Shown here: piece by piece, positions 14,317 through 58,600 of the stretch | How positions within the stretch are numbered: position 1 is the stretch's first letter | Layout: each line of letters begins with the position of its first letter | DNA from: Magallana gigas | Lineage: Eukaryota | Assembly: GCF_963853765.1 (NCBI RefSeq) | Contig: NC_088859.1 | Location: 47,740,001 to 47,804,000, forward strand | Direction: 5' to 3' | Length of the DNA stretch: 64,000 nt | The notes under the pieces: model-generated | Databases searched by the model: none | What the model saw: the letters and a program-made list of their open reading frames with translations, nothing else | Told to the model about the DNA's origin: nothing | Made by a program: the position numbers and the translations under genes

Positions 14317-14665
14317 CTAAACATTGGCATTAAATTTGGATTTTTGTTTTGGTTCTGCAAAAACCACACTAAGATAAGAATCTTTTCTATTATGTACAGA
14401 CTCCTGTGAGTTTGTTGTATCTCCGGATCTAAGAGCTACCGATGGGATGGAGCAGTCGGGCTTATCTGGCTTTTTCTCAATATGATACATTCGAGGTGGA
14501 AGCGGTGGTGGTTGATTGTGGATTTCTTCTGTAAGCGTGCAGTCTTGAGAAGAAAAGAAATCGAATTCGCCCCAACATTCATAATCATCATCGCTGCTAA
14601 TACATGTATCCTCATGCACATCACAATGAATGCTGATAATTTGCATAGGAAGAGTTTTGCCAGTT
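14317..14665 (-). CDS. Probable last coding exon of the tandem-pseudokinase gene (Tyr/Pro docking tail)
   Basis: Acceptor TTTTTCCAG|, phase 2. Encodes TGKTLPMQ...DDDYEC...PPPLPPR...DSYLSVV...stop. Linkage to the kinase exons 17 kb away is inferred. Confidence 0.55.
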
Positions 14666-14778
14666 CTGGAAAAATAACGTTAATGTAAACATATTGCATC
14701 GCTCTAGAGTTTATTCTACAACTGCATAATAATTGTCTTTTAAAATAAATCCCACAAACGAATTCTAACATAGCATAC

Positions 14779-14848
14779 TCTCGCTCGACTGTAAATTCGG
14801 GAAACCTCCGGCAAACAGAGACAGACCATTCTGGTAAAAGGTTCATAA
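14779..14848 (-). CDS. Probable penultimate exon (kinase subdomain XI-like or linker)
   Basis: TTTTTTGCAAG| acceptor and |GTATGC donor. A 113-nt intron joins it in frame to the last exon. Reads MNLLPEWSVSVCRRFPEFTVER. Confidence 0.4.
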
Positions 14849-17418
14849 CTTGCAAAAAACGTGTATTAAAAGTAAGAAAAGTGTAAAGAAAAACGACCTG
14901 AGATGTACAATGAAAATAATTACAGTATCACGACATAAAAATATCAACTTTGTGGGTCCGTTTCATTTAGATTTTTTTCATAGATGTTTTTTAAGGACGT
15001 GCTTTATCTTCTCTCACATTAATTGCATTACCCGCAATTGTTGAAAAGTTTCTTGCGGAGATTTATAATGAAAAAATGAATTCTAAATTATCAGGCTTTC
15101 ATGCATATATGCATAAAGCTCGGAATACCACATTAGTGTATTAACATCAACCTGATGCATGTAATTAAGTTAAAGGGGCGTTGCAATGGGGAAAGAATAA
15201 TTTTTCATATTATGAAACCGTTTAAATCCCGAAATCACAATTCCTTATTTAAATTGATGTTTGATTTTTATATTGTTACTGCATTTGTTAACTTGACCAG
15301 TCCCAGTCAGATTGAAATATCGTACGAAATAAAAAAAATTAAAATTGATTGTCTACGTAACCGAGGTGTCTACTATACCGCTCAACCTGACCGTTGCTGG
15401 AGGGTTTACACAGGGCGTAAGCGACTTATGAATCTGCAGAAGGGTACATATCTTTCGGAACAACTCACTTTCAAAATTTCGCCCCGTATTTACTATATTC
15501 ATTATTAACAAATAACAACAACACATATATACCTTGCATACAGCTAGCCGTGTACGCTGGACGCCATACAAATTTTATTAAACATTTACTACAGGTACAT
15601 GTGTTAATTTTATGTGATATGTAATATACAACTTTGTATTTTTATATAACACCTTTCAACATTGATAATTAAACTCATACAAATAAACAATGACATTTTT
15701 TTATATCACCAACAATGACCTTCCTTCTATGAAAATACATCATAGCCAGCCAGGAAAAACCTAGAAATAAAAAACGATGCAGAATCGTGAAAAAATTCTA
15801 GGAAACATGTATCCGTTGCCAATGCTAAATGATGCAAGAAGGGTGTGACGGACCTCACATAACACATATAATTTTTTAATTATTATATTCCCTAAATAAT
15901 AACGGGTAAAACAACTTCTTGACAAAAAATATTTTAAAAAATTTGGTCTATCGATCACAAGCGACGGCTAGAAAGTGATTTACTCTAGTAATTCATAATA
16001 CGTTCATAACAATTCCTTGCCGCTCATTGGTCAATACTGGACCATAACAATTTGTAAAACATGACTACCGTGAATACAACATTTTCCCGCTATACTGACG
16101 AAACGCGGGAAAATACAATGATCCTTAATAATTTTGAAAGGGTACCAAAACCAGACAAAGAATTCCATGATTGCAGCCCGAGCTGTTACTTCAGCCGTTT
16201 GTGAGGGGAGTGGCACACTCTCATCCTACTTTGTGAAACTGTCCACCATCATAAAAATGTACTCATTCTCCGCCTCTGTGCGGCCGTCCATCTGGTGAGA
16301 GTTGAGTTTTAGGAATCCCTGTCTGCGTGTTCTCCTCTGAGAACAGGGATGCAAGAGAGACACACCATCTATCTTACTAAAAAAAAATCCTGCTATCGAT
16401 CACGTGCACGTCGGCAGTAGTGACAACCACCACACGACTGAGCTTAAGTGCAACTGTCAGGCCCAAGGTCCCACACGGCTGAATTACGCCTCGAGAGAGA
16501 ATTAACGTCCGCAATAGGATGCTTTTTGCCCGGCTGATGAATGTCATACTGACTGAGTTCCTCAAACTACCGTGCTGTTTGCCCCTCTGGATGACGAAAG
16601 TTAATTAACCAGTTCAAACTAAGATGGTCTGTGCGCACGGTAAACTTCTGACCAAGGAGAAAATGTCGGAACTGACGGGTAAACCTGACGACCACGCGCA
16701 ACTCCTTACGAGTTCTACAATATCGACGCTGTTCTGCAGAAAACTTGCATACCCGATGGTTCGCTCTCACCCATGCTGAACTTGACACAACTCCCCGCCA
16801 ATGGCGAAGTCTGAGGCGTCAGTATCCAGAATGAAGTGCCCCTCCTGGGTCAAAATGGCCAATACTGGGGGCTAGTAAGACGTGATATTAGGTCTCGAAA
16901 TGCTTTTTCTTGTTCACTTTCCCACCAGAAGGCAGTCTTGCCATCTTCGCTAGCCAAGGGTTTTCGGTCCACTTTGCTCCCCATAAACCCTTGGCGGATT
17001 TCATTACGATAACTCGGTGACAAGCTCCGTTTTATGATTGGCTGCAGCTGCGAGTAGCTGATCCAATCGCAGTGCTTGTAAATATAAATTTTAAAAGAAA
17101 ACACATGTGTGATCTTTGGTAAAACATTCGGTGCTTTTAACAAGTTGAGGCACAAGTTCTCGAGTACAGTGCCTCCCCAACGATGGTCTAACCAGATCGC
17201 TTTAAAAACCTATATATTTTACTGGGATTTTACATAGTTCTGCAAACTTGTCAAGGCTCGCGTGAATGCATGGGAAGTAAACATGGCGAATGTAGAAGTT
17301 ACCTATCCTGTTATATATTCGTTCCTGCTTATGGTTATTGCTTTTAAAGGTTCAATGAGCTCTGTTTTATTTTATTTTTTTGGTACGCATTATTCACGAC
17401 AAAGATAACGGGCTATTT

Positions 17419-17828
17419 CTCTCTGGCTAATAATATGAGCTTCCGCCAATTTGACTTTGTCATTGTGGTCTATGTCATACTTTTAAAATAGTCGACGTAG
17501 ACCATTGTATGCATGATTCATTGATTGACATTGAAACTATTATCGTTTACACATATTGAACATTCATTGGGTTACATAATTCAGTGCTATATATATGATC
17601 ATTTTCAGTGTAAACATTAATTAATTATTTTGAGTAAAAAATTTACTATTGTTTCATTAATATGTTGTTGTCCACTCATCTTTGTGTATGACTGAACCAT
17701 TGTATATTTTGTACAATGTTCAATTTAAGATGATGAATAATTAAAGCCATGACAATAAAAACTTGCCAACCTACTTGTTTGTTTTTTCTGTTCAGTAGAG
17801 ATAACCCACTTTTAAAAAATGACCATGG
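17419..17828 (+). repeat. 410-bp direct repeat, copy 1
   Basis: Identical by eye to 24238-24647. Confidence 0.93.
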
Positions 17829-56336: not shown

Positions 56337-56896
56337 TGGTCATTCATCCTGTGATTTATTTAAAAATGCAATTTTCCCATAGACTTCAATGTTAACTTCA
56401 AGATGGGATAAATTTGTTAATATTCAATATTTTTGTTAAAATTTTAAAGATGAATCTTTATCGTTAAATAAACTCCTTAAAACCACACTAAGGTTTTAGC
56501 AATCAAAACTGCAATCTATTAGATATTAAACATGATAGTGATGGATGCATTACCTTAACATAATGTTCCGAATTCGAAATATGTATATGTCTTTTACTAT
56601 TTAGAGCCGCGACGCCTCGTATGTCCTGTGCATGACCCTGTGCATACATGTTTACTTTTATTATCTTTATCAAATTCTATTGACAATGCTGTTATTTTAA
56701 ACCACGTGATGCAAATAAAGTTCAAGTCGGTATGCTATAAATTCCGTAAAAATAACACGCAATCACGAGCTTCATTCTAACTTTTAGTACATGCATAATT
56801 TTATCCTTTTATTGAACTAGACTTAAAATAAGAAATAATAAAGATGAGAAAATTTAGCTATAATATCGTTTTAATTGGTCGAATCCATACCCATAC

Positions 56897-57232
56897 CTTG
56901 AGGAGAGAAGAAAGACCTGCTGATCATAGGATTGTGGTTTTCTTTTTTGTAAGGAAAAAATTCAAGAGCATCCATGAATGTATCTTCTAAACACAGGTCA
57001 TTTTTGAGTTTATTATGAATAGTTACACCAGTTGTGTACCCATACTCATCTTCATCAAGATTTTCCATTCGTCTACTAGAATATGCGTGTTGTATTGGAA
57101 GATCGTTAATAGAATCTTTGCTGAAAACCGCCCTGGTGGCTACGTAAATCGGGTGTTCCGTAGGAATAACTGTTTCCGGTATATCCGGTATTTCTGAGTA
57201 GATGTGATTTTCGTCACTAAAGGGAGTACCAT
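56897..57232 (-). CDS. Tandem-pseudokinase gene, 5' exon with Tyr motifs (HIYSEIP, DEYGY)
   Basis: TTGTACAG| and CAAG|GTATGG; 336 nt, phase 1-1, open throughout (the ORF track shows only its 3' part). Confidence 0.72.
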
Positions 57233-58578
57233 CTGTACAACAGGTTTAGTATAAAGTTAGTAAGTTCTGGAAATAATAATTTTTTTAAAAATATTTTCAT
57301 GTTATAAAAGAAATATGCTATTGATAGATAATATAGTGTCATGAGTCAGGCTTTTAAGTCTGTTACCTGATACTTATTTCATTTTTGAATAGTTCATATA
57401 AATTTCACGTAATTTGTTTTTTCTTACGTTAATTTCACTTAAGTGCTCTTTTTATTTGGAAATTTTCGAAAAATAAACAATTAAGTTACGTGAGGCATTA
57501 TTGCTTGTGCAACAACTACTTGCTTATTATGTTTTTGAGTTTTTGTTTTTAGAGAATAAATATCCAGACAAGATATTAGGTGTATCATTTTCTTTTTTAT
57601 TCTTTGGTGTCTCTTTCAAAACGTTTTTCACAATTGATTCCAGACGAGTTTTAACGGCTTGTTAGTTGTTAGGAAATTAATTAAAATGCGTGAAGCATGC
57701 CTTGAATTTAATGTTTTTCTTTTATATCTTAATATTTCCGTTGTCATAGGAAATGGCGGAAAGAAAAACTTTTCTGAGGCACAGGTCAACTTTTAGATAA
57801 AAAAAGAAGTATTTAAATTGTTTTCAGTGGTCAAAATTTACATTTTTCAGTACATGTACCTTTGTCTGTCATAACGCAAATAATCAAATATGAAACATAA
57901 TGTTTAAATCATTTCATTTATGACGCACATAACGTATTGTTGGGATGCAAGCGGGGTTTGCTTAATTATACGAAATGAAAATAACGTAAAAATGTACATA
58001 ATTTTATATTTAATCGCACAATATTTCAAAAGTATTTAAAGCAATATGAGCTGCAATTTTCACGTTGAAATTTTGTTTTACGAAAAGGTTCTAAAATGAA
58101 AAAAAATCATGGTTTTAAATATCTGTAAGCTGTATTTTTGTGAGAAAAGCCATTAAGAAGCCTTTATTGGAGCAAAACTGAATTATTGTTGTCCTGTACA
58201 AAAATTGCTTCAAAAATTCCTTATAAGAGAAATCTTTCTTCTGACAAAAATAAATGAATTTTTCAAACTTTTCTCACCATAAAAGTTTAAGTTACATGCA
58301 GACTTATCAAACTAGCAGGTTTCTGCAGCAAAATATTTTTTTTGAAAATACAGCTCATATTGCTTCAGTAAATATCATTTATATCATCAATGTCCTAATG
58401 CTCAAATCTCACCCATTTTGCAGCAATATTTATCCAAGTTCTTTATATGTCCCGTTCTGTTCCTATGGCTCTAGAAATACCAGGTTTATTATTATAAGAA
58501 AAGATGTGGAAATATAGTCCTTATTGGCTGTTCTATAACTTCTCATTTGTCAAAAGCACGTATGATTTTACACTATAC

Positions 58579-58600
58579 CTGCACAAAGGTAAATCATCAT
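58579..58600 (-). CDS. Candidate first coding segment (MMIYLCA) of the kinase gene
   Basis: ATGATG...GCAG|GTATAG gives phase 1, matching the next exon. Could instead be an acceptor site. Confidence 0.25.

What the first reader, a model, noticed from the sequence alone, without database searches (positions are those of the whole stretch)
14317..58600. Animal tandem-kinase gene in which both tyrosine-kinase-fold domains appear catalytically dead
Seen: 12 phase-consistent GT-AG exons (3261 nt). Kinase 1: catalytic loop LLRDITTAS (no HRD His, no Asn), DFG changed to NFE, no clear Gly-loop or VAIK, but a TK-type PVRWAAPES. Kinase 2: IFRCLRAKN (catalytic Asp changed to Cys), DFG changed to KFG, WLPIE, SDVYAFG. 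No TM, SH2 or FERM domain was recognised. Established: JAKs pair a pseudokinase with an active kinase, and plant tandem kinase proteins act in immunity. Inference: a cytoplasmic double-pseudokinase scaffold or sensor of a type I cannot assign to a named family. Best candidate for an undescribed system here. The 3' end of kinase 2 and the link to 14317-14848 remain unresolved.
Basis: partly seen in the sequence, partly recalled or inferred. Interest (0 to 1): 0.85.

Follow-up and report, generated by a model that had tools for sequence, protein, structure and literature searches.

The report
Oyster gene with two dead kinases
This Pacific oyster gene is real and expressed, and it encodes a cytoplasmic protein with two tyrosine-kinase-shaped domains that have both lost their catalytic residues; it belongs to an unnamed, conserved family found in molluscs and acorn worms whose function nobody has studied.

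Summary
The core observation holds. On the minus strand (58416-14317) lies one Magallana gigas gene of 16 coding exons, about 1,223 codons. It encodes a Tyr/acidic N-terminal segment, an all-alpha solenoid-like domain, two tyrosine-kinase-fold domains and a short proline-rich tail. All four N gaps are intronic; I did not fill them.

RNA contigs from three runs show canonical splicing of exons e4-e5-e6 and e11-e12-e13. The unresolved 3' end is now placed: e13 at 29034-28886 and e14 at 14665-14317.

RefSeq annotates this locus only as truncated, kinase-1-only 'uncharacterized' proteins (842 and 893 aa).

The gene is not an orphan. Oysters carry a small multigene family, and scallops, mussels, unionids, Lymnaea and two hemichordates have colinear relatives with both domains already degenerate. 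In every relative aligned, kinase 2 has Lys or Arg in place of the DFG Asp. Kinase 2 is the most conserved part (dN/dS about 0.2 among Ostrea paralogs).

One correction: the reference is not phase-consistent. It has one base too many at the e11 acceptor. A 90-nt intron is also often retained.

Function is inferred to be a non-catalytic scaffold. I found no paper or earlier scan note on this family.

The parts
58413..58416 (-). Probable first coding exon end: ATGG|gtgaga (start codon plus the first base of codon 2)
   Evidence: This is the only ATGG|GT[AG] upstream of e1. It fits the RefSeq protein P0083, which starts MD with the M not encoded in e1. Inferred, not seen in reads.
56897..57232 (-). 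e1: N-terminal Tyr/acidic segment (IYSEI 57203-57189; DEDEYGYTTG 57056-57027)
   Evidence: 100% tblastn match to P0083. Splice sites. The DLP.QH..S.RRME.LD.EEYGYT block is conserved in all oyster paralogues.
47824..48467 (-). e2 (644 nt): most of the all-alpha N-domain
   Evidence: Same size in five other oyster genes. AF2 model is all-helical, pLDDT 76.
41791..41947 (-). e3 (157 nt): end of the N-domain
   Evidence: Same size in the orthologues.
34206..34997 (-). e4: pre-kinase helices plus kinase 1 from the N-lobe to the DFG position (ASITC at the VAIK position 34704-34690; LLRDITTAS 34341-34315; NFE 34269-34261)
   Evidence: Pfam. RNA joint 34206|34120. Alignment A3.
33942..34120 (-). e5: kinase 1 P+1 loop and alphaF (PVRWAAPES, SDVWSF)
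   Evidence: PF07714 E=2.9e-13. RNA joints 34206|34120 and 33942|33854 in three RNA runs, absent from the DNA run.
33680..33854 (-). e6: C-terminal end of kinase 1
33494..33588 (-). e7: inter-kinase linker
   Evidence: The current RefSeq model P0083 reads on into the intron after this exon.
   Evidence: tblastn with P0001. Spliced this way in the older RefSeq model P0088. 43 nt in the orthologues.
33066..33181 (-). e9 (116 nt): linker and start of the kinase 2 region
32810..32962 (-). e10a (153 nt): kinase 2 N-lobe (beta hairpin and alphaC-like helix)
   Evidence: AF2 model of the orthologous region.
32720..32809 (-). 90-nt GT-AG intron, often retained; in frame and stop-free in this haplotype
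   Evidence: It is an intron of 82-105 nt in C. virginica and O. edulis. The X1 RNA contig 32561-32875 runs through it, and an X2 contig ends exactly at 32720. The older RefSeq model P0088 ends at a stop inside it.
32537..32719 (-). e10b (183 nt): kinase 2 alphaD/alphaE and catalytic loop IFRCLRAKN (32584-32558)
32309..32434 (-). e11: KFG (DFG position) and the activation segment. The extra base is G 32434 or one A of the A9 run 32433-32425.
   Evidence: The canonical AG|G start at 32434 gives 126 nt and a frameshift. A 125-nt exon starting at 32433 is in frame and equals the orthologous exon in C. virginica and two of the three O. edulis genes mapped; O. edulis LOC125668981 (134 nt) and S. 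echinata (128 nt) differ by whole codons. RNA contigs of three runs stop matching at 32433. The DNA contig X19 32374-32579 equals the reference.
31990..32164 (-). e12 (175 nt): kinase 2 P+1 loop WLPIE, alphaF SDVYAFG and an acidic insert
   Evidence: PF07714. RNA joints 32309|32164 and 31990|29034.
28886..29034 (-). e13 (149 nt): C-terminal end of kinase 2 (..KCPDWFY..IDRPSMKTIL)
   Evidence: 88% identical to P0001. RNA joint 31990|29034 in X1, X2 and X12.
14317..14665 (-). e14: short tail with the PPPLPPRMY motif (14511-14485) and the stop codon
   Evidence: The phase fits e13. It starts R-TGKTLPMQI, like RLGKSLPKQI in the orthologues. The junction was not seen in reads.

Best explanation
This is one real, transcribed M. 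gigas gene. It encodes a soluble protein of about 1,223 aa: an N-terminal Tyr/acidic segment, an all-alpha solenoid-like domain, pseudokinase 1, a linker of about 100 aa, pseudokinase 2 and a Pro-rich tail.

It is the M. gigas member of an unnamed tandem-pseudokinase family. The family is present as tandemly duplicated paralogues in oysters and as colinear relatives in other bivalves and hemichordates. Lymnaea relatives, both partial models, were aligned over kinase 1 only.

Neither domain can carry out canonical phosphotransfer:
- Kinase 1 lacks the Gly-loop, the beta3 Lys (Thr in oysters), the HRD His, the catalytic-loop Asn and the DFG Asp and Gly.
- Kinase 2 lacks the Gly-loop and the catalytic Asp (Cys here), and carries Lys in place of the DFG Asp.

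Both folds are kept by purifying selection. The protein therefore most likely acts non-catalytically, as a docking or allosteric scaffold. Its rigid kinase-fold surfaces, above all the very conserved C-lobe of kinase 2, would bind partners. Its flanking YxxI, EYGY and PPPLPPR motifs would recruit SH2- and SH3-type proteins.

Shown: gene structure, expression and splicing, motif losses, family, and constraint. Inferred: absence of catalysis, and the scaffold role with its partners.

In the reference haplotype one extra base at the e11 acceptor breaks the frame. RNA from other animals appears to carry the in-frame junction.
For: Gene model:
- Exon boundaries have GT-AG sites.
- Exon sizes match C. 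virginica, O. edulis (3 genes) and S. echinata: e2, e3, e5-e7, e10b, e12 and e13 are identical in all five genes mapped, and the other exons differ only by whole codons.
- RefSeq P0083 matches e1-e7 at 100%.
- The older RefSeq model P0088 joins e7-e8-e9-e10a.
- Spliced RNA joints e4-e5-e6 and e11-e12-e13 appear in three RNA runs and not in the DNA run.

Fold:
- PF07714 matches both domains.
- The AF2 model of kinase 2 superposes on whole FGFR2 and RET kinase domains (E 1e-12, TM about 0.65).

Dead motifs are conserved across the family.

Constraint:
- dN/dS among O. edulis paralogues is 0.18-0.22 for PK2, 0.28-0.30 for PK1 and 0.30-0.40 for the N-domain.
- PK2 is 77-82% identical between oyster genera, against 22-23% for the tail.

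Family breadth. O. edulis paralogues form a species-specific clade, and two of them are adjacent on the chromosome.

No TM segment. The N-domain is all-alpha.
Against: - No biochemical data exist. Several pseudokinases by sequence bind nucleotide or show odd catalysis (established knowledge), and kinase 1 keeps the RD Asp.
- In the reference the frame is broken at e11, and a DNA run agrees with the reference.
- Both RefSeq models for M. gigas stop before the kinase 2 core.
- The 90-nt intron is retained at roughly half the RNA depth.
- The M. gigas branch is about 1.5-1.9 times longer than the C. virginica one.
- SNPs in RNA contigs give pN/pS of about 0.53, not significantly below 1 (p = 0.06).
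- The in-frame e10b-e11 junction in RNA is deduced from where contigs stop matching and from contig lengths. It was not read directly.
- The SH2/SH3 motif reading is pattern matching only.
Confidence: 0.7

Rival explanations
1. The M. gigas copy is losing its 3' half. The functional product would be the truncated kinase-1-only protein that RefSeq annotates, and kinase 2 plus the tail would be a recently disabled remnant.
For: - Frameshift at the e11 acceptor in the reference, confirmed by a DNA contig.
- Two successive RefSeq models stop before the kinase 2 core.
- A stop lies in the retained 90-nt intron of another haplotype.
- The tail is 116 aa, against 350-445 aa in the orthologues.
- The M. 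gigas branch is longer.
Against: - In the frame that the extra base shifts out of, 253 codons across e11-e14 stay open.
- Kinase 2 is still the most conserved region of the M. gigas protein. dN to C. virginica is 0.11, against 0.24 for the whole gene, with dS saturated.
- e11-e12-e13 are precisely spliced in three RNA runs.
- The RNA contigs stop matching exactly where the extra G sits, as expected for an intact allele.
- The faster rate affects kinase 1 equally.
Confidence: 0.2
2. One or both domains keep a non-canonical enzymatic activity or regulated nucleotide binding, so the protein is an atypical kinase rather than a pure scaffold.
For: - Kinase 1 keeps the Asp of HRD in oysters.
- Hemichordate kinase 1 keeps the VAIK Lys and HRD.
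- Some oyster kinase 2 sequences keep the catalytic-loop Asn.
- Precedents for atypical catalysis exist (established knowledge, for example WNK and CASK).
Against: - Each domain has several simultaneous losses, including the Gly-loop and the beta3 Lys in oysters.
- Lys or Arg occupies the metal-binding Asp position of kinase 2 in all 19 sequences aligned.
- The catalytic Asp of kinase 2 is Cys or Ser in oysters.
Confidence: 0.08
3. The two kinase-like regions belong to two neighbouring genes, or the exons are not transcribed.
For: RefSeq models of M. gigas contain only kinase 1.
Against: - Single full-length models with identical exon structure exist in four other oyster species.
- P0088 links kinase 1 to the kinase 2 N-lobe.
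- An RNA contig spans e10a-e10b, and others span e11-e13.
- Relatives in other phyla are colinear.
Confidence: 0.02

Closest known systems
Janus kinases (JAK1-3, TYK2)
   Same: A cytoplasmic tyrosine-kinase-group protein with two kinase-fold domains in tandem, the first of them a pseudokinase. The kinase 2 profile hits TYK2 and JAK1 JH1 at about the same level as FGFR, IGF1R and MET.
   Different: There is no FERM or SH2 domain; the N-terminus is an all-alpha solenoid-like domain. The second domain is also dead. The inter-domain linker is about 100 aa. Kinase 1 has no JAK among its best 60 PDB matches.
PEAK-family pseudokinase scaffolds (PEAK1, PRAG1/Pragmin, PEAK3)
   Same: The likely mode of action: a TK-like pseudokinase with an N[F]x motif at the DFG position, flanked by Tyr and Pro-rich docking motifs, acting as an adaptor (from established knowledge).
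   Different: PEAK proteins have one pseudokinase domain with a split helical dimerisation module and a long disordered N-terminus. No PEAK chain is among the best 60 PDB matches shown for either domain. Homology is not shown.
Plant tandem kinase proteins (for example Rpg1, Yr15/WTK1, Sr60)
   Same: Two kinase-fold domains in one soluble protein with at least one pseudokinase. Gene families expand by duplication.
   Different: Plant TKPs derive from plant RLK/Pelle Ser/Thr kinases. The domains here are animal tyrosine-kinase-group folds. The origin is independent, and no immune role is shown here.
Receptor pseudokinases of the TK group (EphB6, ErbB3, PTK7, ROR, RYK)
   Same: TK fold retained with catalytic residues replaced. 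From memory, EphB6 also carries RLG at the DFG position, like hemichordate and unionid kinase 2.
   Different: Those are single-domain transmembrane receptors. This protein has no signal peptide or TM segment and has two dead domains.

Membership tests
Protein kinase fold, tyrosine-kinase group (Pfam PF07714) | Significant match to PK_Tyr_Ser-Thr with TK-type P+1 loop (P-[IV]-[KR]-W-x-A-P-E) | tested here: met
   PF07714 hits on e4, e5 and e12 ORFs. P0001 scores 123.8 bits in two stretches. PVRWAAPES and QWLPIE are present. The best PDB matches are all tyrosine kinases.
Pseudokinase (sequence definition) | Loss of at least one of the beta3 Lys, the catalytic-loop Asp or the DFG Asp | tested here: met
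   Kinase 1: Lys to Thr (ASITC) and DFG to NFE, with the catalytic Asn also lost. Kinase 2: Asp to Cys (FRC) and DFG to KFG.
Pseudokinase (functional definition) | No phosphotransfer activity in vitro | not testable with these tools
   Needs purified protein.
JAK family | N-terminal FERM and SH2-like domains | tested here: not met
   Pfam finds only kinase domains in the full-length P0001. The N-domain model is all-helical, with only weak ARM/HEAT-like matches.
JAK family | C-terminal JH1 domain catalytically competent (HRD, DFG) | tested here: not met
   Kinase 2 has FRC/FRS and KFG in oysters. Lys or Arg replaces the DFG Asp in every family member aligned.
PEAK / NKF3 family | Single pseudokinase flanked by SHED dimerisation helices; sequence relatedness to PEAK1 and PRAG1 | tested here: inconclusive
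   No PEAK1 or PRAG1 chain is among the best 60 PDB sequence matches of either domain or profile, but only 60 of more than 600 hits are shown. The architecture differs, with two domains.
Plant tandem kinase proteins | Domains derived from plant RLK/Pelle (Ser/Thr) lineages | tested here: not met
   Both domains match animal tyrosine kinases best. Family members were found only in molluscs and hemichordates.
Unnamed mollusc-hemichordate tandem pseudokinase family (for example O. edulis LOC125672350, C. virginica LOC144620701, M. yessoensis LOC110457493, P. flava XP_070563230) | Colinear PK1-linker-PK2 module with [HLV]R[DN][ILV]T..S at the PK1 catalytic loop and [KR][FLVI]G at the PK2 DFG position | tested here: met
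   Colinear BLAST alignments over about 580-700 residues, E 1e-31 to 1e-56. Alignments A2 and A3. Exon structure matches the other oysters, with eight exons identical in size and the rest differing by whole codons.

The most novel reading that the evidence does not exclude
The family could be an old bilaterian invention. On this reading, a soluble protein with two tyrosine-kinase folds was already catalytically dead before molluscs and hemichordates diverged, and was kept for several hundred million years as a decoy or allosteric sensor of tyrosine-kinase signalling or of pathogen effectors that target kinases. This would be functionally analogous to plant tandem-kinase immune proteins. Lineage-specific tandem expansion in oysters, unusually high amino-acid polymorphism and segregating loss-of-function alleles would be the signs of an arms race.
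Probability: 0.15. Interest if true: 0.8.

Novelty: new variant of a known kind. Interest (0 to 1): 0.55.

Why it matters
Pseudokinases are now seen as allosteric switches and scaffolds. The tandem arrangements studied so far, such as JAK and GCN2, pair a dead domain with a live one. I could find no described animal protein that keeps two dead tyrosine-kinase folds in tandem under purifying selection across phyla.

Such a protein would be a natural system for asking what a kinase fold is good for once chemistry is gone, and how two such folds talk to each other.

For oyster genomics there is a practical point. The current M. gigas RefSeq models of this locus are truncated, and the reference carries a frame-breaking base that other animals seem to lack.

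Tried and rejected
- **Gly-loop in kinase 1.** 'GVYGTV' upstream of kinase 1 is not conserved even among oysters and lies outside the kinase alignment. Rejected.
- **Alternative splice sites for e10b-e11.** I looked for another donor or acceptor that would restore the frame. No other AG exists, and no phase-2 GT donor exists (sequence).
- **Homopolymer assembly error.** A DNA run contig matches the reference exactly. 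That run may come from the reference animal, so this is not settled.
- **M. gigas transcript-derived protein fragments covering kinase 2.** The search found only C. virginica entries.
- **More phyla.** A search with the hemichordate module found only the two hemichordates plus unrelated kinases.
- **N-domain fold.** Foldseek gave only weak designed-ARM matches (E about 0.01, TM 0.3-0.4). VIA-align's best Z of 8.6 is within the noise for helical proteins. No specific fold could be assigned.
- **Remnants of a longer tail downstream of the stop.** Only low-complexity proline matches were found.
- **dN/dS between genera.** dS is saturated, so O. edulis paralogues were used instead.
- **Literature.** Searches on oyster kinome, tandem or double pseudokinase terms and locus names found nothing on this family.
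- **Two isoform proteins** (P0075, P0078) were not on record for locus retrieval.

Full report
**Organism and locus.** The window is Magallana (Crassostrea) gigas. The RefSeq protein XP_065921941.1 (P0083, 'uncharacterized protein [Magallana gigas]', 842 aa) maps to the minus strand with 100% identity over e1 and e7 and 99.5% over e2. The lower values for the HSPs in between come from extension past exon ends. An earlier scan note had already named the species. The window has 34% G+C and four N runs.

**Gaps, tested first.**
- Three N runs (35049-35176, 35220-35355, 41508-41650) lie in the intron between e3 (41947-41791) and e4 (34997-34206).
- The fourth (49167-49310) lies between e1 and e2.
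- The flanking exons have the sizes seen in five other oyster genes (644, 157 and 792-804 nt).
- Alignments to P0001 and P0083 run across these junctions without missing residues.
- No coding sequence is hidden in the gaps. I did not fill them or look them up.

**Gene model.** I used a full-length relative from the exhaustive HMMER search: P0001, Ostrea edulis LOC125672350, 1499 aa, 59% identical. With tblastn and direct reading of splice sites, I place 15 exons plus a probable 4-nt first coding exon end (ATGG|gtgaga, 58416-58413). Coordinates are in the parts list.
- All boundaries are GT-AG.
- Across a 14.2-kb transposon-filled intron follows e14 (14665-14317). It begins R-TGKTLPMQI, like RLGKSLPKQI in the orthologues, and ends in a stop.
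- The same exon series is found by exact protein-to-genome mapping in C. virginica, three O. edulis genes and S. echinata: 644/157/79x/179/175/95/43/116/153, a small intron, then 183/125/175/149 and a long last exon. S. echinata and one O. edulis gene depart from this at e9, e10a and e11 by whole codons.

**Expression and splicing** (contigs of three RNA-type runs and one DNA run laid on 28890-34889).
- The joints 34206|34120, 33942|33854, 32309|32164 and 31990|29034 are present in all three RNA runs and absent from the DNA run. All have GT..AG ends on the minus strand.
- The kinase 2 exons are therefore transcribed and spliced, beyond the 3' end of the current RefSeq model.
- The older RefSeq model XP_034312924 (P0088, LOC117684513, 893 aa, 96% identical, evidently another haplotype) joins e7-e8-e9-e10a as I predict.
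- An RNA contig spans e10a, the small intron and e10b.
- Kinase 1 and kinase 2 are thus linked in a chain of evidence. No single full-length read was available.

**Two irregularities.**
1. *The frame at e11.* With the only AG available, e11 starts at G 32434 (126 nt). The frame then shifts and stops at codon 969.
   - If e11 starts at 32433 (125 nt, AAA AAA AAA CAA = KKKQ), the remaining 253 codons through e14 are open.
   - The exon then has the length found in C. virginica and two O. edulis genes (acceptors ...tag|AAAAAAGAACAA and ...cag|AAACGAGAACAA). The other two genes mapped differ by whole codons (128 and 134 nt).
   - The RNA contigs of all three runs stop matching at 32433 and do not include the G. 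In two runs exactly 54 further letters remain. That equals e10b 32537-32590 up to the next graph branch.
   - I read this as an in-frame junction in those animals. It is a deduction, because the tool did not print the loose letters.
   - The DNA contig X19 32374-32579 equals the reference, but it may come from the reference animal.
   - The extra base is therefore either a frameshift allele or an error shared with that data set.
2. *The 90-nt intron.* The intron at 32809-32720 is a true intron in the other species (82 and 105 nt). In M. gigas RNA it is covered at roughly half the exon depth.
   - In this haplotype it is in frame and stop-free and would add 30 residues to the kinase 2 N-lobe.
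   - In the P0088 haplotype it contains a stop.

**The domains.**
- *Sequence matches.* Pfam finds PF07714 in both halves. By sequence and by profile both domains match only tyrosine kinases in the PDB, without a clear subfamily. Kinase 1 matches PTK6, Fes, ROS, ABL, FGFR and EGFR. Kinase 2 matches EGFR, TYK2/JAK1 JH1, FGFR, IGF1R and MET, all within a few bits.
- *Kinase 2 fold.* An AF2 model of the orthologous C. virginica kinase 2 (pLDDT 74) has a beta hairpin, an alphaC-like helix, beta4-beta5 and a full C-lobe. It superposes on whole FGFR2 and RET kinase domains (E about 1e-12, TM about 0.65). Kinase 2 is therefore a complete, if reduced, bilobal fold.
- *Kinase 1 motifs* (alignment A3). 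There is no Gly-loop. Thr sits at the beta3 Lys position (ASITC, invariant in oysters). The alphaC Glu is kept. The catalytic loop is C-L-[LVI]-R-D-I-T-T-A-S, with the His and Asn lost and the Asp kept. DFG is NFE.
- *Kinase 2 motifs* (alignment A2). There is no Gly-loop or VAIK. The catalytic loop is I-F-R-C-L-R-A-K-N (Ser instead of Cys in C. virginica). DFG is KFG.
- *N-terminal domain.* The 270-residue N-terminal domain is predicted all-helical (pLDDT 76) with only weak ARM/HEAT-like matches.
- *Other features.* No TM segment or signal peptide is seen.

**The family.**
- *Oysters.* The exhaustive search found only 47 proteins at E<=1e-3 and six at E<=1e-10. Oysters have several paralogues, all 'uncharacterized' or misnamed after best hits:
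  - five loci on one O. edulis chromosome, two of them adjacent;
  - three in C. virginica;
  - Saccostrea orthologues;
  - a second M. gigas locus represented by the fragment K1RC80.
- *Tree.* The O. edulis copies form one species-specific clade. The window's gene is sister to the C. virginica copies.
- *Distant relatives.* More distant proteins align colinearly over PK1-linker-PK2 (about 25% identity, E 1e-31 to 1e-56). They come from scallops, Mytilus, unionids and the hemichordates Ptychodera and Saccoglossus. Two partial Lymnaea models align over kinase 1 only.
- *Shared degeneracy.* Kinase 1 has HR[DN]-[IV]-T-x-x-S-F with no Asn, and NFG, DFS or DFR. Kinase 2 has Lys or Arg at the DFG-Asp position in every member, and its catalytic Asn is lost outside oysters and mussels.
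- *Gradient.* Hemichordate kinase 1 still has the VAIK Lys and HRD, so there is a gradient of decay.
- The double-dead state therefore probably predates the mollusc-hemichordate split. That is an inference from the distribution.

**Selection.**
- Between genera dS is saturated. Among the three O. edulis paralogues, Nei-Gojobori dN/dS is 0.18-0.22 for kinase 2, 0.28-0.30 for kinase 1, 0.30-0.40 for the N-domain and 0.42-0.58 for the tail.
- Kinase 2 is the best conserved part of the M. gigas protein (77-82% identity to other genera).
- From three-way dN, the M. gigas branch is about 1.5-1.9 times longer than the C. virginica one, in both kinase domains alike.
- SNPs visible in the RNA contigs split 12 synonymous to 24 non-synonymous (pN/pS about 0.53; one-sided binomial p = 0.06). 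Constraint within the species is weak, or the gene is unusually polymorphic.
- If kinase 2 had been unconstrained since the split from C. virginica, its dN would approach the saturated dS. It is 0.11. Any disabling of kinase 2 in M. gigas is therefore recent or allele-specific.

**Mechanism (inferred).**
- With the metal-binding Asp replaced by a basic residue, no Gly-loop and no beta3 Lys, canonical ATP/Mg binding and phosphotransfer are very unlikely.
- The strong conservation of the kinase 2 C-lobe points to a binding surface. This includes the P+1 loop WLPIE, alphaF, an invariant acidic insert GQEGVVYDQDEERE, and the alphaH-alphaI region.
- The flanks carry candidate docking motifs:
  - a conserved Y-[DS]-[VE]-I and an acidic EYGY block at the N-terminus;
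  - a PPPLPPR-x-Y motif in the tail (PxxPxR class II type, close to the Sos PPPVPPR motif, from memory).
- The most economical reading is a PEAK-like adaptor whose two dead kinase folds provide rigid interaction or allosteric modules. This is not tested.

**Comparison and novelty.**
- It is not a JAK: no FERM or SH2 domain, and the second domain is dead.
- It is not a plant TKP: the fold lineage is the animal TK group.
- It is not shown to be a PEAK-family member.
- I found no paper on it and no earlier scan note. The word search returned only unrelated SOCS-box pseudokinases.
- It is best called a new variant of a known kind: pseudokinase scaffolds, or tandem kinase-fold proteins.

**Limits.**
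- Read laying and the look-up of sequencing runs allow one call each, so the e10b-e11 and e13-e14 junctions were not read directly.
- The spliced M. gigas protein has no reference, so structure predictions used P0083 (N-domain) and the C. virginica orthologue (kinase 2).

Noticed in passing
window 17880-21354 (+): A degenerate LTR-retroelement pol in the e13-e14 intron. It has a SCAN-like gag and integrase (H2C2, rve, SH3_Tf2-1) upstream of RT and RNase H, although the domains are Ty3/gypsy-type. From memory, this is the copia-like domain order of 'Gmr1-like' gypsy elements. It is split into three overlapping ORFs.
   Followed up: partly
window 35940-37571 (-) and 38796-40010 (+): A Penelope-like element (RVT_1 plus a GIY-YIG endonuclease) in the e3-e4 intron, with a partial inverted second copy next to it.
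   Followed up: partly
window 43000-43959 (+): A Tc1/mariner-type DDE_3 transposase ORF in the e2-e3 intron.
   Followed up: partly
window 50767-55774 (+): An apparently intact LINE (zf-CCHC ORF1; APE + RT + zf-RVT ORF2 of 1338 aa) in the e1-e2 intron.
   Followed up: partly
window 32720-32809 (-): A 90-nt intron inside kinase 2 is retained at roughly half the RNA depth. It is in frame and stop-free here, but carries a stop in the haplotype behind the older RefSeq model, so isoform output differs between alleles.
   Followed up: partly
window 34315-34351 and 34425 (-): The reference haplotype differs from the RNA contigs and from P0088 and P0089 at several amino acids just before the kinase 1 catalytic loop (RQE versus SQG or SHG; R570G). 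The reference seems to carry a minority haplotype of a very polymorphic gene.
   Followed up: partly
L002 1-3599 and 10001-44589; L004: In O. edulis two family members (LOC125668981 and LOC125672350) lie head to tail about 6 kb apart, and a third lies about 70 kb further on. This is a tandem array. One intron holds a DDE_Tnp_4 transposase gene.
   Followed up: no
window 41340-41430: A long (TA)n-type microsatellite directly beside the N run 41508-41650.
   Followed up: no
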